Source of the DNA: Mobula hypostoma
Taxonomy: Eukaryota
Direction: 5' to 3'
Length of the DNA stretch: 64,000 bases
NCBI RefSeq assembly: GCF_963921235.1
Contig: NC_086119.1
Span: 8,122,001-8,186,000, forward strand
A program made the position numbers and the translations under genes. Positions 15,451 to 44,420 of this stretch are shown one piece after another; position 1 is the first letter of the stretch; each line of letters begins with the position of its first letter. The notes beneath the pieces were generated by a model that was not told where the DNA came from, ran no database searches, and saw nothing but the letters and a program-made list of their open reading frames with translations.

Positions 15451-18400
15451 TTCCAGCCTCCCCGATGGCCACATCCGCGCCAGGTGCATGGAGATGCAGC
15501 TCCTTAGAGACCGAGTTAGGGAACTGGAGCTGCAGCTCGATGACCTTCGGCTTGTGAGGAAAAGTGAAGGGGTGAGAGGCAGGAGCTACAGGGCGGTAGT
15601 CACCCTAAAGCTACAGGAGACAGATAAATGAGTGGCTATCAGGAGAGGGAAAGAAGAACAACAGATAGTGGAGATCACCCCTGTGATCGCCCCCCCCCAA
15701 CAATAAGTACTCCATTTTGAGCACTGTTGGAGGGCTTGGGGAAACAACAGCAGCCTTGCCTCTGGCACTGAGTCTGGTCCTGTGGTTAGGGGAATAGATA
15801 GGCTATTCTGTGGATGCAGAAAGGATGGTAGATTGCCTCCGAGGTGCCAGGGTCTCAGATGTTTCTGAATGCATCCACAATACCCTGAAAAGGGAGGGTG
15901 AGCAGCTAGAAGTTGTGGTGCGTATTGGTACCAACAAGATAGGTAGAGAAAAAGGGAGGAGATCCTGAAAACAGAATACAGGGAGTTAGGAAGGAAGCAG
16001 AGAAGCAGGACCCGAAGGGTAGTTATATTAGGGTTGCTGTCTGTGCCACACAACAGTGAGGATAGGAATAGAATGAGGTATCAGGTAAATGTATGGCTGA
16101 AGAATTGGAGCAGAGGGGCAAGGATTCAGATTTCTGGATAATTAAGACCTCTTCTGGGGCAGGTGTCACCTGTACAAAAGGGATGGGTTGCTCTTGAATC
16201 CAAGGGGTGGGGGGATATCTTTGCGGGCAGGATTCTTAGAGCTGTTGGGAGTGGTTTAAACTAACATGGCAGGGGGATGGGGACCAGTATGACAGAGCTG
16301 AGGATGAGCCAGCAGGTTTACAAGTAGATGATGTAATATATAACATGAATGTAAGGAAGGACAAGTCAATGATTGGGTACAACTATAGACAGAGCAAAGA
16401 CTTAAGTTATACCACAGAGGCAAAATTCATAAGGACAAAGAATACAGGAATGAAGGTGTTGTATTTAAATGCGCGTAGCATTCAGAATAAGGTGGACAAA
16501 CTCGTGGTGCAATTAGAGATTGGTTGGTATGACACTGTGGGCATCACTGAGTCGTGGCTTAAAGAAAGTCATAGTTGGGAGTTTAACATCAAAGGACAGG
16601 CAAGAAGGCATAGGGAGTGGTGTGGCTCTGTTAGTAAGAGATGGAATTGCATCTCTAGAAAGATGTAACATAGGGTCAGAAAATGTTGAATCTTTGTGGG
16701 TGGGGTTAAGAAATTGCAAAGGTTTTAAAAAAAAAACATTATGGGAATCATATATAGGCCTCCAAGTAGTATCCAAGTTAAGGTGTTGAGATTGCAAAGG
16801 GAGCTGGAAAGGGCATGTAATAAGGGTAGTGTCACAATTGTAATGTGGGACTTCAATATGCAAGGGGATTGGGAAAATTGGAGTGATGTCAGATCGTAAG
16901 AGAGGGAATTTGTTGAATGCCTACGAGATGGCTTTTTAGAGCAGCTTGTGCTTGAGCCTACTAGGGGAAAGGCCATCTCAGATTAGGTGTTGTGTAACAA
17001 CTGATTTTGTTATTCAGCTTTACGTAAACGAACCCCTAGGAGGCAATGATCATAATATGATTGAATTCATACTGCAATTTGAGAGGGAGAAGCACAAGTC
17101 ACTTGTGTCAGTATCACAATGGAATAAAGGGAATTACAGAGGCATGAGAGAGGAGCTTCCCGGGTGGATACTGGCAGGGATGATGGCAGAACAGAGGCTG
17201 AAGTTTCGAGGAATAGTTCACGAGGCACAGGATCGATATGTCCCAAAGAAGTAGTTGTTCTCAAATGACAGAGCTAGGCAATCGTGGCTGACAAGGGAAG
17301 TTAAGGACTGCATAGAAGCCAAGGAAAGGGAATATAAGGTAACAACAGTGAGTGGGAAGTTGGATGATTGAGAAGCTTTTAAAATCCAACAAAAGGCAAC
17401 TAAAAAGCTCTAAGAAGGGAAAAGATTAAATATGAGGGCAGGATACGAAATGTTTTTTTCAGTTATATAAAGAATAGGTGGGGGGATAAGAGGTGTTATT
17501 GGACCATTGGAAAATGATGGTGGTGAGGTAGTAATGGGGGACAAAGAAATGGCAGATGAACTTAATAAGTACTTTGCTTCAGTCTTTACTGTGGAAGACA
17601 CAAGCTGTATATCAGAGGTCCATCAGTATCAGGGAGCAGGAGTGAGAGCCAATGCTATTACAAAGCAAACATCACGAGGCAAACTGGAAGGTGTTGGGGT
17701 GGATAAGTCACCTGATCTAAATGGCCTACATCCCAGAGTCCTGAGAGAGGTTGCTGAAGAGATAACAGATGCATTGATCATGATCTTTCAAGAATCACTT
17801 GATTCTGGCTTGGTCCCAGAAGACTGAAAATTTGCAAATATCACTCCACTCTTTAAGAAGGGAGGAAGATAAAAGAAAGGATATCATAGGTCAGTTAGCA
17901 TAACCTGTGATTTGAAAAGTGTTGGTCCATAATTAAGGAAGAGGTTTTGAGGTACTTGCAGACTAATGGTAAAATAAATCAAAGTCAGCGTGGTTCCTAG
18001 AAAGGGGAATCTTGCCTGGCAAATCTGTTAGAGCTCTTCAAGAAAGTAACAAGCAGGGTGGACAAAGGAAAGGCAGTGGCTGTCATTTACTTAAATTTTC
18101 AGAAGGCATTTGACGAGGTGTCTCACATGAAGCTGCTTAACAAGATAAAATCCCATGGTGTTACAGGAAATATACTGGCATGAACAGAGGAAAGGCTAAT
18201 GGGTAGGAGGCAGAGAGTGGGAATAAATGGGGCCTTTTCTGGTTGGCTGCCAGTGACTCGTGGTGTCCTCAGGAGTCTGTATTGGGATTGCTACTTTTCA
18301 CATTGTTTGTCAATGATTTAGATAGAAGGTTTTGTGGCAAAGTTTGCGGATGATCTGAAGATAGGTGGAGGGGTAGGTAATGCTGAGGAAGCAATGTGAT

Positions 18401-23152: not shown

Positions 23153-23227
23153 TTAGCAAGCACTTTGCTCATCAAAGCTGGTGTTTGAAGAGGAGCAGCC
23201 ACCAGGAGGACTTTTCGGATGAGCCAT
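23153..23227 (-). CDS. PRR11: PRR11 last coding exon (MAHPKSPPGGCSSSNTSFDEQSAC*)
   Basis: tttcag acceptor, TAA stop; resembles the human end LAHPRSP...SSFDEQN. Confidence 0.92.
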   Translation of the reverse strand: MAHPKSPPGGCSSSNTSFDEQSAC

Positions 23228-24883: not shown

Positions 24884-25414
24884 TACTCAGTGGCCACTAT
24901 TTGATACACTTGCTCATTAATGCAAATATCTAATCATCCAATCATATGGCAGTAACTCAATGTATAAAAACATGCAGACATGGTCAAGAGATTCAGTTGT
25001 TGATCAGACCAAACATCAGGATGGAGAAGAAATATGATCTGAAGTGACTTTGACTGTGGACTGATTGTTGGTGCCAGACAGGGTGGTTTGAGTATCTCCA
25101 AAACTGATCTGGGATTTTCACACACAAGTCTCTAGAGTTTACAGGGAATGGTGCAAAATCCAAAACAAAAAAAATCCAGCGAGTGCCAGTTCTGTGGGCA
25201 AAAACTCCTTGTTAATGAGAGAGGTCAGCTAATAACCAGACTGGTTTAAGCTGACAGGAAGACGACAGTAACTCAAAAATAACTATGCACTACAGCAATG
25301 GTGTGCAGAAGAGCATCTCTGAATGCACAACACATCAAACCTTGAAGTGGATGTGCTACAGCAACAGAAGACCAGGAACATACACCCCTGTATCTAAAAG
25401 TGACCATTTAGTGT
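24884..25414 (+). mobile_element. Tc1-like transposon deletion derivative
   Basis: Terminal ctcagtggccact with a degenerate inverted copy at the right end; remnant of the DLSDFD.G.IVGAR..GLSIS transposase N-terminus. Confidence 0.7.
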
Positions 25415-25655
25415 GGGATGGATGTGGGTGCTTTGATGGGGATTTCCTGACAGGTGGAGACTGTGAGCAAATCCTGGCAACTGGAGACTATTAGCAATCA
25501 TCAGCGGGCAAGCACAGACCACATTTCAGCAAAGGGTCAATGCCCTGAAGACAGTCATAAAAGGAAACAGTTTGGATATTTTGAGGACACCATTTATTAG
25601 ATGCCACATTGACAAAATGATGGATGAAGAGCGTTAAAGCAACCAGCTAACTTAC

Positions 25656-25749
25656 CTCAAATTTGCGTCTTAGTGCTTGGGTCATAACTGGCGTCAATCC
25701 CGTCGCAGTATCTTTGTTTTCCTTGTGCAGAGGTGTTCCACCCGGGCTC
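25656..25749 (-). CDS. PRR11: PRR11 exon ([32 protein letters not shown]), contains a KEN box
   Basis: AG/GT flanks, phase 2 to 0; close to human [13 protein letters not shown]...[14 protein letters not shown]. Confidence 0.97.
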
Positions 25750-27960
25750 CTAAAATCAAACACCTTTTAGGGTGAGTGATCATAGCATTCAACTCAAAAT
25801 ACACAAGCATCTATTCTTCATTAGCAAGGTATATAATTTTACACAACAAGATTTCAAGTACTCCACATAGTCCTGAAGAGTAATTTTAATTCTTTGTAAA
25901 ATGATGTACAGTATCTTGTTCAGAAGTTGTGTTTTTCAACTGGAAAAATGTGGGTATCAATTATTTAAATCACATTCAGTCTCTAATTTTCATCTGCTAA
26001 CAAACTGGAGTTGGACTTCAATGATATTTGAGAGGAGCAGCAAGTAGCACAAAAATGTGCTTAAGGATGAAATTAAAGAATGCAAAATCTCCTTCAGACA
26101 TACTGGATACGAAGGTGGCTTGATAGGTAGGTCAACGTCATGGGACTGAGGAACTCTGGGTCCGGCAGCATCTTTGCAAGGAGATGGACTGTCACCGTTT
26201 CGGATTGAGACCATCATGATATTAAATGGCAGGATAGTCTTAAAGAACCTGATGGCCTGCTCCAAATGTTTCTTGTATTCAGCTGGGAACAATGTACAAG
26301 GATCCAAACATGCATAGGGATACTGTGGGCAGCATGGTACGTATTGGTTAGCACAACACCTTATAATGCCGGCTGTAAAAATCGATCGGGATTCAATTCT
26401 TGCTGCTGTCTGTCTGTATGTTCTCCCAGTGACCGCGTTGGTTTCGTCCTGCACTCCAAAGACATTATGGGTCAGGTAGGGTTAGTAAGTTTTGGATATG
26501 CTATGTTGGCACTAGAGGCATGGCAATACTCGCAGGCTGTCTCCAGCACAACCCAGTGTTGGTCACTGACGCAAAACAAAGCATTTCAATGTATGTGAGA
26601 CAAATAGACCTAATGTTGCCCCCCCACCCCACCTCCATCACCTTTGTTAGATTCAAGGCTGAGTGGAAAGAGGGCTACAGATTGTTTGGTGAAAGAATGA
26701 GAAAAAAAATCAAGTTTCTCCTCATAACAGACATATTGAGCACCCCACGCCCCCTCCCAATGCCATTCTTCAGTTATAAAGTACGTGTGGAATTTAAGAA
26801 GATAAGCAGGGCTAGATTTCATTCTGATGTTTACCAGTAGCCTTGCAGGTTGACAAAGTGCATTTCCATGAATGACTGGAAGAATCACAGGTAGTTATGG
26901 AATTGTATTTATAAAGAAGGCACTATTCTTTGAGCGAGATATACTGAAGATAACAAAAGAGAAAGAAATGTTGGAGATGCAAGAACCAACTGACCATTGC
27001 TATCTAGAACTCAAAACAGAATAATGGATCATGGGCTATGTCTATCCTCACCGAACTGTTGCACAATGGCAAGTGGTGAATAATCTCATTATTGACTTCT
27101 GCCCTGCAGATGGTGGAAAGAGCTGGGAAGTTGGGAAAGGAGTTACTTGCCACCAATATATATCCTTTGTCTTACACCTGTAGTCACATCAAAATTCAAA
27201 GTAAAATTCACAGTGTTTTGTAACTTCAAAACATTAAATTGATTTGAAGAAAAACCATGAGAGCTGGGAACGTGATTCTTGAGTTTATTCTTTAAGGAGG
27301 CATGCATATCGCATGCCATACACTACGTTGAGAATTATTTTCATACCGGCACTTACATGAAGATTAATATAATAGGATTTATAAAAAATATTCAGAAATA
27401 GACTGACAAACAACCAATGTGCAAAGAGAGTATGAGTTGTAAAGAGTCTTCGAAAGTGAGTCGATAGACTGTAGAATCAGTTCCGAGTTGAGGTGAGTGA
27501 AGTTATCTACGTGACTTCAGGATGGCTGTAGTGTGGTGTGGGACCCAAGGCTCCTGTACCTCCTGCCTGATGGTAGCAGCTACAAGAGAGCACATGGGGG
27601 TCTTGGAGGATAAATGCTGCTTTCTTGAGGCAGTGTTTCATGTAAATGTGCTCAATGGTGGCAAAGCTTTGCTTGTGATAGACTGAGCCACCTCTGGCTA
27701 AATCCACCACTTTCTGTAGTCTTTTCCATTGTTGGGTATTGGTGTTTCTATACCAGTTAGGATATTTTCCACTGTGCATCTATAGAAATTTGTCAAAGCT
27801 TTGGTGACATGCCAAATCTACACAAACTTCTCACAAAGTAGAGGCAATGTTAATCTCCAGGCCAAATCTCAGCACATTTTTGTCACGTGCACATGATTAA
27901 TATAACTTCATAACATTACCAATGCAACTTAAGGATTAATGTTTAAACACTAGCTATTAC

Positions 27961-28023
27961 CTTTCTATATTTACTTTCTTTAGACGCTGCCGAAGATCCA
28001 AAACAGGTCGATGTGGAGTGATC
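27961..28023 (-). CDS. PRR11: PRR11 exon (ITPHRPVLDLRQRLKKVNIER)
   Basis: AG/GT flanks, 63 nt, phases consistent; human ITPGKSQMDLRKLLRKVDVER. Confidence 0.92.
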
Positions 28024-28629: not shown

Positions 28630-28888
28630 AGTGGATGTCATTTACTTAAATTTTCAGAAGGCATTTGACGAGGTGCCTCACATGAAGCTGCTTAACAAGG
28701 TAAAATCCCATGGTGTTACAGGAAATATACTGGCATGAACAGAGGAAAGGCTAACGGGTAGGAGGCAGAGAGTGGGAATAAATGGGGCCTTTTCTGATTG
28801 GCTGCCAGTGACTAGTGGTTTCCTTTGGAGTCTGTATTGGGATTGCTACTTTTCACATTGTTTGTCAGTGATTTAGATAGAAGGTTTT
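28630..28888 (+). repeat. 259-bp internal CR1 RT segment nearly identical to 18075-18333
   Basis: Direct comparison; shares the same inactivating lesions. Confidence 0.85.
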
Positions 28889-28968: not shown

Positions 28969-29075
28969 ATCATTTTTGTTGGTTTCTGTAGTTGATTAGC
29001 ATTTCCCTGAAAATTAAAGCCTTGTAGATCAGAGAGTGTGACCAAAGGAGACCTTTTCTTTCCTGGTGTATCCAT
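28969..29075 (-). CDS. PRR11: PRR11 exon (MDTPGKKRSPLVTLSDLQGFNFQGNANQLQKPTKM)
   Basis: AG/GT flanks, phase 0 to 2; human RNPLVTVSDLQ. Confidence 0.92.
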
Positions 29076-29741: not shown

Positions 29742-29840
29742 CTTCGTCTTTTCTACATTGTTCTGAGTCTTTCTCAGCTTCACATGAAGCAGATCTTTTA
29801 CTGTAACAAATGGAGGTCCGTCCTTCTTCTTGTTATCCAA
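29742..29840 (-). CDS. PRR11: PRR11 exon 6b (LDNKKKDGPPFVTVKDLLHVKLRKTQNNVEKTK)
   Basis: 99 nt, phase 0/0, cag acceptor, gtgagc donor; best match to human KKDGPMQITVKDLLTVKLKKTQ. Confidence 0.92.
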
Positions 29841-29932
29841 CTGGGGGGGGGGGGGGGAATCACAAGATCAACCCTACAACAAATTATAATGATAAACCAA
29901 CCACTAGCTTGATATGACCAAAACTGACTGAC

Positions 29933-30031
29933 CTTCGTTACTTCAAATCTGTCTGCAGTGCTCTTCAGCTTTACTTGAAGCAAATCTTTCGTAGTTATGG
30001 ATAGTGACTTACGAATCTCCTCATGGATTGT
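29933..30031 (-). CDS. PRR11: PRR11 exon 6a, paralogous copy of 6b (TIHEEIRKSLSITTKDLLQVKLKSTADRFEVTK)
   Basis: 99 nt, phase 0/0, ttcag acceptor, gtcagt donor, open frame, same KDLLxVKL motif. Confidence 0.8.
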
Positions 30032-31634: not shown

Positions 31635-31886
31635 CTGCTGAGGATTTTCAGTTCTGCTTTTCCGTTTAATCTGCAGAGGTTTCTCTGCAAGCAGGAAAGC
31701 TGGAGGTAGTGGAGGTGGGGGAGGAGGAGGAGGAGGAAGAAGAGGAAGAGCCTCATCTGATATCTTCAGCAGAGCACGACTGACAATTGGCTGCACTGGC
31801 CATACTGGAATTTTATTAAGTCCTGGTACAGAATCTGCATGCTTTCGGCAGCAACATCCTTCAGCTGCTTTTGCAGTATTAGGGTC
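31635..31886 (-). CDS. PRR11: PRR11 polyproline exon (DPNTAK...LLPPPPPPPPPLPPAFL...ENPQQ)
   Basis: 252 nt, phase 0/0, AG/GT flanks, proline-rich tract typical of PRR11. Confidence 0.93.
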
Positions 31887-35867: not shown

Positions 35868-35999
35868 CTGATGGTGCTCAAAGATTTCTTGCATTCGTGT
35901 TAGTTTGATCTCAAGTGACTCAATTTGTTGCCGAAGTGCATTCAGCTCCCGCAGGTAAACACGTGAAGGATATAGAGTATCTTTGATGAATTCCAATCC
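35868..35999 (-). CDS. PRR11: PRR11 exon (GLEFIKDTLYPSRVYLRELNALRQQIESLEIKLTRMQEIFEHHQ)
   Basis: 132 nt, AG/GT flanks; human [25 protein letters not shown]. Confidence 0.93.
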
Positions 36000-38557: not shown

Positions 38558-38711
38558 CTGCCTAATGTTCTTAAGCCACCATGAATACATGGAGTAAACC
38601 ACAGTCTTAAGAGGATTCAAAAAATTCTTCACATTTGCTAAAGGAATGAGCCCAACAGGAACTGATTCATGCAGGAAGGAATTGCTGTTAGATGCGACCA
38701 CGTCCTCCTTC
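38558..38711 (-). CDS. PRR11: PRR11 exon (EKEDVV...VVYSMYSWWLKNIRQ)
   Basis: 154 nt, phase 2 to 0, AG/GT flanks; human VWSIYSWCQNCITQ. Confidence 0.88.
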
Positions 38712-40727: not shown

Positions 40728-40879
40728 TCGGTTGTTTGGCAAGTGGTTGGCTTTGGCTTACAGATATCTCCCTTGTACTTTCTTAGCATCGTTTGCTTAT
40801 TTTTTCTCTGTGCCCTTCCTATTGCTTGCCATTTTCTCATGATCTTCCGCTTTCTGCGACGCCAATTCAGTTTAAACAT
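40728..40879 (-). CDS. PRR11: PRR11 first major coding exon (MFKLNWRRRKRKIMRKWQ...), basic NLS-like N-terminus; the assembled ORF is 408 aa with both exons 6a and 6b
   Basis: Exon begins at 40881 after a cag acceptor, ATG at 40879, gtaagt donor; human MPKFKQRRRKLK; all downstream exon phases join into one frame (1227 nt). Confidence 0.9.
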
Positions 40880-42923: not shown

Positions 42924-43294
42924 CTTTCATAAGCCGCGCTTAGAAACTATTCTCGACCAACCGCCTCGAGTTTCTTATCGTCATTCGACTTAACTCAACA
43001 AATAGGAAAACACAAGGTCCAGAGCCGAACGCCACTTCCAGCCAATCCAACATTTCCTTTCTGATCCAATAGCGTGCAGAGCGTATTATGACTGTCCAAT
43101 GAAGTGACAGTATAAATGATCCCGCCATCCTATCGGCACACTACAAAATCTAAAAGGCAATCCAATCAGAAATGGCGTTTCTGCTATTCCCAATAAGAAG
43201 ACAGAGTTTGTGCAGCAACTGTCCAATCATAAGCCACGTTACATCTGCTTAAAAGGCCTTTATCGGTTCGCCTTCGGAATGTAAACTATTCAAT
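42924..43294. promoter_or_regulatory. PRR11 exon 1 and PRR11/SKA2 bidirectional promoter with six CCAAT (NF-Y) boxes
   Basis: Minus-strand donor gaaag|gtaagt at 42924; CCAAT at 43042, 43066, 43096, 43162, 43190, 43223; head-to-head arrangement known in human. Confidence 0.8.
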
Positions 43295-43419: not shown

Positions 43420-44420
43420 CTCGCGGTCACGGGGAAAAAACTTTAAAAAATTTCCGCGCGCGCGCGATAGGTGTATTTTTTCGGCAAAAAGTTTAATTTG
43501 TTTGAAAGCTCGATCCTGATTTGCATCCGGGTAATTAGGTGCAAAAATGGCGGGATTGAGATCTCTTACTTGTGGTAGCAGCAAATTGGAGTTCTTTTTT
43601 TTTCACCCCCCCATCCCACCCCCGCCCGCCCCGGGGATTGCCTCAGAATTCCGAGTTCGGGGGGTGGGGGGGTTTATAAAATAGGAGCGATCATCTGGGT
43701 AAACCCGTGGGAGGGCCGAAGCATTCCGGTGTTGTCGCGCCTGTTTTCATTCGTCTTGGGTGCCCCTCCCCTTTTTTTTCCCATCTTCAACCCCCCCACC
43801 TTAACTAACCCTCCCCCTCCCCCTCGCTCGCTCGCGCCCGCACGCGCGCCGGGGAGAGCGGCAGCCGCCGATTGGGTGACGGTTTGGACGGTTTTTGACA
43901 GTTTGGGCGACGTCGTGCCGTGCGCGCCGCCGTCCCCGCGCGCGCACCCCCCCCCCACCTCCCCGGCCGCTCGGCGCTTAACCGCCACCCGGCGCTTGTT
44001 CCTCGCTTGACAGCCAGCTGCTAGGTTGCGCGCGCAAACGGGGTCCGGGCTGCCTAGATCGGTCGACCTTTTATTTTTTTTTCTTCTTCTCGTGTGTGTG
44101 TGTTTTCTTTCTTTAAAATAACTCCGTGTTGGTATTTTTGTTCCGTGCACGCTTAGCAAACCAAAGGGCGACAGGGAGCTACGGTATCGCTCGTCAGATT
44201 GTTCACGGCGGCAATCCCCGGCACCCCTCCCAGTAGTACGAGAAGCTGTGTGTGTGTGTGCGCGCCCCCGTGGGGATGGGACATTGTAGTGGGTGCATGG
44301 TGTACCGGCTTGTTTGCAGCATGTTTCATTGCACCGGTTCTCGTGAATTGCACTAGTGTCTCACCATTTAAAATCGCTCATTTCGCGAGGTGCCAGGCTA
44401 TTGGAAACGTAAGGTATTCA
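43420..44420. promoter_or_regulatory. CpG island in SKA2 intron 1
   Basis: High GC and CpG density, gcgcgcgcgc runs, YY1-like aaaatggcgg, E2F-like tttccgcgc, GC boxes. Confidence 0.75.

What the first reader, a model, noticed from the sequence alone, without database searches (positions are those of the whole stretch)
29742..30031. Tandemly duplicated 99-nt exon in PRR11 adds an extra KDLLxVKL(K/R) module
Seen: two phase-0, 99-nt, open exons separated by a 92-nt intron, both ending acgaag|gt. They encode SITTKDLLQVKLKST and FVTVKDLLHVKLRKT, and have diverged outside the motif, which implies an old, selected duplication. Knowledge: human PRR11, as I recall it, has one such exon (ITVKDLLTVKLKKT) followed by related VTVSDLQ and DLRKLLRKV segments. 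Inference: these resemble WH2-like actin-binding repeats behind a polyproline tract, so this lineage has an extra repeat (408 aa) or alternative/mutually exclusive isoforms (375 aa).
Basis: partly seen in the sequence, partly recalled or inferred. Interest (0 to 1): 0.7.

Follow-up and report, generated by a model that had tools for sequence, protein, structure and literature searches.

The report
Duplicated PRR11 exon, already annotated
Sharks and rays carry a second, tandem copy of one small exon of the gene PRR11, which gives the protein an extra short motif; the copy is real and old, but it is already in public gene models for this species and 18 relatives, so it is a modest curiosity.

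Summary
On the minus strand there are two 99-nt, phase-0 exons: 6a (30031-29933) and 6b (29840-29742). A 92-nt intron separates them, and both have AG/GT sites. Each encodes a KDLLxVKL(K/R) module just after the polyproline exon of PRR11.

My 10-exon model gives 408 aa and is identical to RefSeq XP_062887928.1, Mobula hypostoma PRR11 isoform X2. Both exons appear in annotated PRR11 of 19 elasmobranch species, and 6a is in all 39 isoforms checked. Isoform X3 (378 aa) skips 6b, not 6a; the same skip is annotated in three sharks. In the zebra shark 6b has decayed (acceptor AG changed to AA, DLL codons deleted).

Lamprey, ray-finned fishes, amphibians, reptiles, birds and mammals have one such module. 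The bowfin genome has only about 139 nt where 6a would sit. Profile comparison identifies 6b as the ancestral exon and 6a as the derived copy. The duplication therefore predates the shark-ray split; chimaeras could not be checked.

The WH2 reading is not supported. There is no Pfam WH2 hit, and the only PDB resemblance is a weak match (E 0.21) over VKLKKT.

Low novelty: the double exon is already annotated broadly.

The parts
29933..30031 (-). PRR11 exon 6a, the derived duplicate. It is 99 nt, phase 0-0, and encodes the SITTKDLLQVKLKST module. It is present in all 39 annotated elasmobranch isoforms examined.
29841..29932 (-). 92-nt intron between 6a and 6b. It runs GTcagt...C15-AG. The C15 polypyrimidine run is at 29843-29857.
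29742..29840 (-). PRR11 exon 6b, the ancestral copy and ortholog of the single KDLL exon of other vertebrates. It is 99 nt, phase 0-0, and encodes FVTVKDLLHVKLRKT. It is skipped in isoform X3.
31635..31886 (-). Polyproline exon (252 nt) immediately upstream of 6a.
28969..29075 (-). Exon 7 (107 nt), the VTLSDLQ module. It is an older, more divergent relative of 6b.
27961..28023 (-). Exon 8 (63 nt), the LDLRQRLKKV module.
25656..25749 (-). Exon 9 (94 nt), the most conserved PRR11 segment ([28 protein letters not shown]).
23153..23227 (-). Last coding exon, including the stop codon.
35868..35999 (-). Coding exon 3, a conserved helical segment (LEFIKDTLYPSRVYLRELN...).
38558..38711 (-). Coding exon 2.
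40728..40879 (-). Coding part of the exon that holds the isoform X2 start codon (ATG at 40879). The acceptor lies 2 nt upstream of the ATG.
42924..42930 (-). ATGAAAG|gtaagt, the end of an upstream 5' exon. Spliced to 40881, it gives the MKV N-terminal extension of isoform X1.

Best explanation
This is the PRR11 gene of a devil ray; its predicted protein is identical to a Mobula hypostoma RefSeq protein. Exons 6a and 6b come from a tandem duplication of about 180-190 bp (one 99-nt exon plus a short intron). The duplication arose after cartilaginous fishes split from bony vertebrates and before sharks and rays split. Exon 6b is the original exon. Exon 6a is the inserted copy, lying between the polyproline exon and 6b. 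Both exons are symmetric (phase 0-0, 99 nt), so each can be included or skipped without breaking the frame. Both have been kept open, spliceable and conserved in their 14-residue core. The full protein therefore has three consecutive exon-sized modules of the type [VI]T.xDL..V.L[KR]K, followed by an LKKV segment. Other vertebrates have two modules plus the LKKV segment. In current gene models 6a is constitutive and the older 6b behaves as a cassette exon; in the zebra shark 6b has decayed. This implies the two copies are at least partly redundant and that one KDLLxVKL(K/R) module is the minimum kept. Shown here: the anatomy, the orthology, the taxonomic distribution, the constraint and the annotated isoforms. 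Inferred: each module is a short helix-forming linear binding motif in a disordered region behind the polyproline tract, so the duplication changes the number of binding sites for a partner. That partner is not identified; actin or Arp2/3 is plausible from the human literature.
For: The gene model has 10 coding exons, all AG/GT, and gives 408 aa. It is identical to P0185 = XP_062887928.1, PRR11 isoform X2 of Mobula hypostoma. Both modules are present in annotated PRR11 of 19 elasmobranch species; 6a is in 39 of 39 isoforms and 6b is absent from 5. In six elasmobranch genomes (this window plus five fetched loci) 6a is 99 nt (96 in Rhinoraja) with intact AG/GT. Exon 6b is 99 nt (93 in Heptranchias) and intact in five of them. 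The intron between them varies: 75, 79, 92, 190 and 804 nt in the five genomes with an intact 6b. In shark-versus-ray pairs the intron is 51-62% identical, against 71-78% for 6a. Nei-Gojobori dN/dS in deep pairs is 0.24-0.70 for 6a and 0.17-0.42 for 6b. The 6a and 6b profiles align with P 2.3e-14. The single module of 19 other vertebrates matches 6b better (score 63.5, P 4e-17) than 6a (44.5, P 1e-11). Lamprey, bichir, bowfin, gar, teleosts, axolotl, frog, squamates, turtles, birds and mammals each have one KDLL-type and one SDLQ-type module. In the bowfin genome the intron at the 6a position is about 139 nt and holds no 6a-like sequence. In Stegostoma the 6b acceptor is AA instead of AG and 9 nt encoding DLL are deleted; its RefSeq protein lacks 6b. 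AlphaFold2 puts a short helix on each module within a low-confidence, otherwise unstructured region. Human PRR11 associates with Arp2/3 and affects F-actin (PMC8720695).
Against: I have no direct transcript evidence. Inclusion of 6a and skipping of 6b therefore rest on RefSeq model isoforms whose read support I could not inspect. Chimaeras were not found in the protein collections, so the older bound of the duplication is not fixed. Starfish PRR11-like proteins also have three modules, so module number has changed more than once; the direction of change rests on parsimony and profile scores. dN/dS on 33 codons is noisy, and one shallow pair gives 1.9 for 6b. The binding function of the modules is not demonstrated.
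Confidence: 0.85

Rival explanations
1. The modules are divergent WH2/LKKT-type G-actin-binding motifs. On this view PRR11 is a polyproline plus tandem-WH2 protein, and elasmobranchs have an extra actin-binding site whose use is tuned by splicing of 6b.
For: Each module ends in KLKKT, KLRKT or LKKV, which resembles the WH2 LKKT/V motif, and the modules sit just after a polyproline tract. A profile of the vertebrate module hits the 32-residue MIM WH2 chain 2d1k_C over VKLKKTTTNDR. Human PRR11 affects F-actin and Arp2/3 (PMC8720695). AlphaFold2 predicts short helices at the modules.
Against: There is no Pfam WH2 hit at E up to 10 for the exons, the whole protein, the 225-345 region or 19 orthologous modules. 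The PDB hit has E 0.21 and covers only 11 residues. Profiles of 6a and 6b hit no WH2 chain. In canonical WH2 (LLxxIxxGxxLKKV, from general knowledge) the LL lies about 9 residues before LKK; here a single residue separates LL from VKLKK. No paper in the library mentions PRR11 together with WH2. Model confidence in this region is below 56 pLDDT.
Confidence: 0.2
2. Three KDLL/SDLQ modules are ancestral, and the 6a-type exon was lost in lampreys and bony vertebrates rather than gained in cartilaginous fishes.
For: Starfish PRR11-like proteins (Acanthaster, Asterias) have three modules before the LKKV-type segment.
Against: It needs at least two independent losses, in lamprey and in bony vertebrates, against one gain. 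A crinoid has two modules. 6a is far closer to 6b (P 2e-14) than to exon 7, as expected for a younger copy. Bowfin has no relic of 6a in a 139-nt intron.
Confidence: 0.06
3. 6a and 6b are mutually exclusive exons that give two 375-aa proteins.
For: They have the same length and phase, are adjacent and are homologous, which is the usual origin of mutually exclusive pairs.
Against: 34 of 39 annotated isoforms contain both exons, and none lacks 6a. The intron is 75-804 nt, long enough for ordinary splicing. The frame stays open with both exons included.
Confidence: 0.03
4. The modules act as leucine-rich nuclear export signals or other hydrophobic docking motifs unrelated to actin, and the duplication alters localisation.
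For: V-KD-L-LH-V-K-L fits the loose pattern Phi-x2-Phi-x2-Phi-x-Phi of class 1b export signals. This rests on my own knowledge and on reading the sequence.
Against: The pattern is highly degenerate and was not tested here. The basic residues inside and after the motif are not typical of such signals.
Confidence: 0.08

Closest known systems
RefSeq PRR11 of Mobula hypostoma (XP_062887927.1 X1, XP_062887928.1 X2, XP_062887929.1 X3) and of 18 other sharks and rays
   Same: X2 is identical over all 408 aa to the model built from the window. X1 adds MKV at the N-terminus. X3 lacks exactly the 33 aa of exon 6b. The other species show the same 6a + 6b arrangement.
   Different: Nothing differs in sequence. 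The public records are gene models and carry no comment on the exon duplication.
Human and other tetrapod PRR11 (360 aa, ten exons; PMC9775115)
   Same: The order of parts is the same: basic N-terminus, helical segment, polyproline tract, KDLLxVKLKKT exon, VTVSDLQ exon, LRKxLKKV segment, then the conserved SPGGTP...KEN...[14 protein letters not shown] tail.
   Different: These proteins have one KDLL exon instead of two. The extra 33 aa (6a) lies between the polyproline exon and the ancestral exon.
Tandem exon duplication in general, a well-known route to repeat expansion and to alternative or mutually exclusive exons
   Same: The exons are adjacent, of equal length, of equal symmetric phase and significantly similar. 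The duplicate is missing from outgroups.
   Different: Here both copies are usually spliced in together. The older copy has become optional, and in one lineage (Stegostoma) it has decayed.
WH2 domain (Pfam PF02205; for example the MIM WH2 bound to actin, PDB 2D1K)
   Same: The modules have an LKKT/LRKT/LKKV-like basic motif preceded by hydrophobic residues, are repeated in tandem and follow a polyproline tract. There is a weak PDB match over VKLKKT.
   Different: The Pfam model does not match. The hydrophobic LL sits directly next to the LKK motif instead of about three helical turns upstream. Actin binding has not been shown.
Todr1 (2610318N02Rik) ortholog reported elsewhere in this genome (earlier finding s1-142170)
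   Same: It is said to combine polyproline, a WH2-like segment and a PRR11-type C-terminus, so it may be a distant paralog built from the same parts.
   Different: It is a different gene on another piece of the genome. I did not examine it.

Membership tests
PRR11 (proline-rich protein 11) | Full-length identity or similarity to annotated PRR11 proteins | tested here: met
   The window model is identical to XP_062887928.1. Against the skate PRR11 used as query, shark and ray orthologs score E 1e-111 to 1e-213 and tetrapods about 1e-56.
PRR11 (proline-rich protein 11) | Pfam PRR11_1st (PF28521) and PRR11_2nd (PF28520) | tested here: inconclusive
   Precomputed hits are listed for all orthologs, including the 90%-identity cluster that contains the window's protein. 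The local Pfam copy I could scan returned neither family for P0185 at E up to 10; I could not tell whether it holds them, so I did not reproduce the hit myself.
PRR11 (proline-rich protein 11) | Head-to-head neighbour SKA2 | not tested
   SKA2 lies head to head with PRR11 in the Hemiscyllium, Hypanus and Amia loci. I did not look for it in the window.
Tandem exon duplication | Adjacent exons of the same length and the same symmetric phase | tested here: met
   Both exons are 99 nt, both phase 0-0, and 92 nt apart.
Tandem exon duplication | Sequence similarity beyond chance, in register | tested here: met
   BLASTP E 8e-7. hhalign P 2.3e-14 over columns 2-33 of both profiles. 52/99 nt identical, with 0 of 20,000 shuffles reaching it.
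Tandem exon duplication | Single copy in outgroups | tested here: met
   19 non-elasmobranch vertebrates have one KDLL module. The bowfin genome has no 6a. Chimaeras were not available.
Mutually exclusive exon pair | Transcripts contain exactly one of the two exons | tested here: not met
   34 of 39 annotated isoforms contain both exons. This rests on annotation only; no reads were available.
WH2 domain | Match to the Pfam WH2 model | tested here: not met
   No WH2 hit at E up to 10.
WH2 domain | LKKT/V-type motif | tested here: met
   KLKST (6a), KLRKT (6b) and LKKV (exon 8) in the window. KLKKT/KLRKT is conserved in orthologs.
WH2 domain | Amphipathic helix of about three turns ending a few residues before LKKT (LLxxIxxGxxLKKV) | tested here: not met
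   LL is separated from VKLKK by one residue. AlphaFold2 gives helices of 5-13 residues that overlap the motif, at pLDDT below 56.
WH2 domain | Binds monomeric actin | not testable with these tools
   This needs biochemistry or a complex prediction; only monomer prediction was available.

The most novel reading that the evidence does not exclude
PRR11's exon-sized modules are a compact, unrecognised variant of the LKKT/WH2 actin-monomer-binding motif. PRR11 would then be a polyproline plus tandem-motif actin assembly factor. Sharks and rays would have raised its valency from two to three by exon duplication, and would adjust it by skipping exon 6b.
Probability: 0.15. Interest if true: 0.5.

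Novelty: already known. Interest (0 to 1): 0.2.

Why it matters
It matters little for discovery, because both exons and the shorter isoform are already in RefSeq for this species and many relatives. The comparison still has some value. It shows which residues of the PRR11 module are kept over roughly 300 million years in two independent copies: I/V-T-x-K-D-L-L-x-V-K-L-K/R-x-T. It also shows that at least one such module is always retained. This points to the part of this cancer-associated but poorly understood protein that most deserves a binding assay. It is also a tidy example of exon turnover: the younger copy has become constitutive, while the ancestral copy became optional and has decayed in the zebra shark.

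Tried and rejected
- **RNA-seq junctions:** I have no read-level evidence.
- **Transcript-derived fragments:** a search for protein fragments spanning 6a-6b (P0185:211-345) found nothing.
- **Genomic DNA that could not be fetched:** files too large for Scyliorhinus canicula, Hemiscyllium, Cetorhinus and Hypanus. Narcine X2 and Chiloscyllium plagiosum X2 were not on record because only the longest isoform is indexed.
- **Chimaeras (Callorhinchus and relatives):** none appeared among the 120 hits listed of the 279 found with the full-length skate query, nor among the 60 representatives that match the conserved exon 9. I ran no further search on this. A full-length chimaera protein should already have ranked above birds.
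- **Pfam on the exons and on whole proteins:** only chance-level hits.
- **PDB sequence search with the whole protein:** nothing relevant.
- **AlphaFold2 model:** mean pLDDT 55, too poor in the module region for a fold search, so none was run.
- **My first guess for the last coding exon (about 25360-25490):** wrong. Ortholog mapping places it at 23227-23153.
- **6a as a chance open frame or pseudo-exon:** rejected, because it is conserved with intact splice sites in six genomes.

Full report
**What is in the sequence.**
The feature lies on the minus strand. Exon 6a runs 30031..29933 and exon 6b runs 29840..29742. Both are 99 nt, open and phase 0-0. The intron between them is 92 nt and ends in a C15 tract before the AG. 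The encoded peptides are as quoted: 6a carries SITTKDLLQVKLKST and 6b carries FVTVKDLLHVKLRKT.

The two exons align without gaps in the same register. At protein level 12 of 22 residues are identical, BLASTP E 8e-7. At nucleotide level 52 of 99 bases are identical, and 29 of 42 in the core. None of 20,000 shuffles and none of 9,014 other 99-mers from the window reached that. The window contains no N.

**The gene.**
I bracketed the exons by mapping orthologs with tblastn and then fixed every boundary on AG/GT sites. There are ten coding exons on the minus strand between 40879 and 23153.

To obtain relatives I searched the most conserved exon (25766..25650) against the protein representatives. 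I then searched the closest full-length hit, a skate PRR11, against the named collection.

The window model is identical, residue for residue, to XP_062887928.1, 'proline-rich protein 11 isoform X2 [Mobula hypostoma]'. Isoform X1 (411 aa) adds MKV from an upstream exon that ends ATGAAAG|gtaagt at 42930-42924. Isoform X3 (378 aa) is identical except that it lacks exactly the 33 residues of 6b. The window is therefore this species or a very close relative, and both the double exon and a shorter isoform are already public gene models.

**How widespread it is.**
I checked 39 annotated isoforms from 19 elasmobranch species:
- Rays and skates: Mobula (2 species), Hypanus, Hemitrygon, Narcine, Amblyraja, Rhinoraja.
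- Sharks: Heptranchias, Cetorhinus, Carcharodon, Rhincodon, Stegostoma, Chiloscyllium (2 species), Hemiscyllium, Scyliorhinus (2 species), Mustelus.

Exon 6a is present in all 39 isoforms. Exon 6b is present in 34. The five isoforms without 6b are M. hypostoma X3, S. canicula X2, C. plagiosum X3, C. punctatum X3 and the only Stegostoma protein. None lacks 6a. The exons are therefore not mutually exclusive. On the annotation, 6b is a cassette exon and 6a is constitutive.

A search for transcript-derived protein fragments across the junction found none.

**Genomic comparison.**
I obtained PRR11 loci for Heptranchias, Rhinoraja, Stegostoma, Rhincodon and Amblyraja.

| Feature | Result |
|---|---|
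| 6a length | 99 nt (96 in Rhinoraja), intact AG and GT in all six genomes, counting the window |
| 6b length | 99 nt (93 in Heptranchias), intact in five genomes |
| 6a-6b intron | 75, 79, 92, 190 and 804 nt in the five genomes with an intact 6b |
| Intron identity, shark vs ray pairs | 51-62%, with indels |
| 6a identity, same pairs | 71-78% |
| dN/dS (Nei-Gojobori), deep pairs | 6a 0.24-0.70; 6b 0.17-0.42 |

The dN/dS values are noisy on 33 codons but point to purifying selection on both copies. The invariant residues cluster in the core: I12, T13, L17, V20, K21, L22 and T25 in 6a; V12, T13, D16, L17, L18, V20, K21, L22, R23 and T25 in 6b.

In Stegostoma the 6b acceptor reads AA instead of AG, and nine bases encoding DLL are deleted. 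This matches its 374-aa RefSeq protein, which goes from 6a straight to exon 7. So in one lineage the ancestral copy has decayed while the younger copy carries on.

**Which copy is the original, and when it arose.**
In 19 other vertebrates there is exactly one KDLL-type module followed by one SDLQ-type module, 32-33 residues apart. These are lamprey, bichir, bowfin, gar, three teleosts, axolotl, a frog, two squamates, alligator, turtle, two birds and four mammals.

In the bowfin genome the polyproline exon is followed after about 139 nt by the single module exon. No 6a-like sequence lies between them.

A profile of that single module matches 6b better than 6a. The score is 63.5 (P 4e-17, 31 columns) against 44.5 (P 1e-11, 27 columns). 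Exon 6b also keeps the KKDGP lead-in and the position next to exon 7. Exon 6a is much closer to 6b (P 2e-14) than to exon 7, where the probability is 42%. Exon 6b and exon 7 are themselves distantly related.

The simplest history is that PRR11's middle was built from exon-sized repeats, and that one further tandem duplication of the 6b exon produced 6a. This happened after the split from bony vertebrates and before sharks and rays diverged. Chimaeras could not be found in the collections, so I cannot say whether it is elasmobranch-specific or common to all cartilaginous fishes.

Starfish PRR11-like proteins also have three modules and a crinoid has two. Module number has therefore changed more than once in deuterostomes. 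I give about 6% to the alternative that three modules are ancestral.

**Function.**
The modules sit in a region that AlphaFold2 models with low confidence (pLDDT mostly below 56). It places a short helix on each module, at residues 244-256, 277-281, 310-314 and 342-345. This fits short linear motifs that fold on binding. Human PRR11 is reported to recruit Arp2/3 and to affect F-actin, with the second polyproline region needed for filopodia (PMC8720695). Reviews list only an NLS, two proline-rich regions and a zinc finger as features (PMC9775115).

It failed the tests available:
- There is no Pfam WH2 match at E up to 10 for the exons, the whole protein, the module region or 19 orthologous modules.
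- The only PDB resemblance is a non-significant hit (E 0.21) of the module profile to eleven residues, VKLKKTTTNDR, of the MIM WH2 peptide 2d1k_C.
- The 6a and 6b profiles hit no WH2 chain.
- The spacing differs from canonical WH2, because the LL pair sits directly next to the LKK motif.

No paper in the library links PRR11 with WH2, sharks or exon duplication. I put the WH2-like reading at about 20%. My committed reading is that the duplication adds one more copy of a partner-binding motif, with the partner unproven.

**Verdict.**
It is a feature of sharks and rays in general and is already present in RefSeq models for this genome. What I add is the polarity (6b ancestral, 6a derived), the fact that the ancestral copy is the one that is skipped, its decay in the zebra shark, and the negative WH2 tests. 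Interest is low.

I did not test it. It may be a distant paralog and is worth including in any motif study.

Noticed in passing
L003:14427-14519 (Stegostoma tigrinum PRR11 locus): Exon 6b has decayed in the zebra shark. The acceptor is AA instead of AG, and 9 nt encoding DLL are deleted in frame. The rest stays open, and the RefSeq protein skips it.
   Followed up: yes
window 29843-29857: A G15 run on the plus strand (C15 on the gene strand) forms the polypyrimidine tract of the 6b acceptor. Skates and sharks have TGTGGCATTCACAG-like sequence at this position, so the homopolymer is specific to this ray lineage. It is also the kind of tract that is prone to length errors in assemblies.
   Followed up: partly
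window 42924-42930 (minus strand): An upstream exon ends ATGAAAG|gtaagt. Spliced to 40881, it explains the MKV N-terminal extension of RefSeq isoform X1.
   Followed up: partly
window 25656-25749 (exon 9): The most conserved PRR11 segment contains a KEN tripeptide (HKENKD). K362 and E363 are nearly invariant across 52 deuterostome sequences. This could be an APC/C degron in a cell-cycle-regulated protein; I did not test it.
   Followed up: no
P0061 versus P0189 (Amblyraja radiata X2 versus X1): Isoform X2 lacks exactly the 21 residues of exon 8, the LRQRLKKV module. A second module-bearing exon is therefore also annotated as optional in a skate.
   Followed up: partly
P0054, P0059, P0060, P0041 (echinoderm PRR11-like proteins): PRR11 is not confined to vertebrates. 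Starfish, crinoid and sea cucumber proteins share the polyproline tract, the VTLxD(I/L)xxVKL(K/R)K modules (three in starfish, two in the crinoid) and the SPGGTP...GLTP tail.
   Followed up: partly
L002:17048-17060 versus P0002 residues 259-260: The annotated Rhinoraja protein reads VN at the start of 6b, where the fetched genomic sequence translates to ID. This is a small mismatch between the gene model and the locus.
   Followed up: no
window 28649-28852 and 18094-18297 (minus strand): Two nearly identical stretches of about 200 bp give the same open-frame translations. One lies in the PRR11 intron after exon 7 and the other about 10 kb downstream of the gene. They look like copies of an interspersed repeat.
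   Followed up: no
L006:1-334, and the loci: SKA2 lies head to head with PRR11 within about 0.3-0.7 kb in bowfin, Hypanus and Hemiscyllium. The bidirectional PRR11-SKA2 pair known in human is therefore old. I did not check it in the window, where the GC-rich region at 43700-44400 is the likely shared promoter.
   Followed up: no
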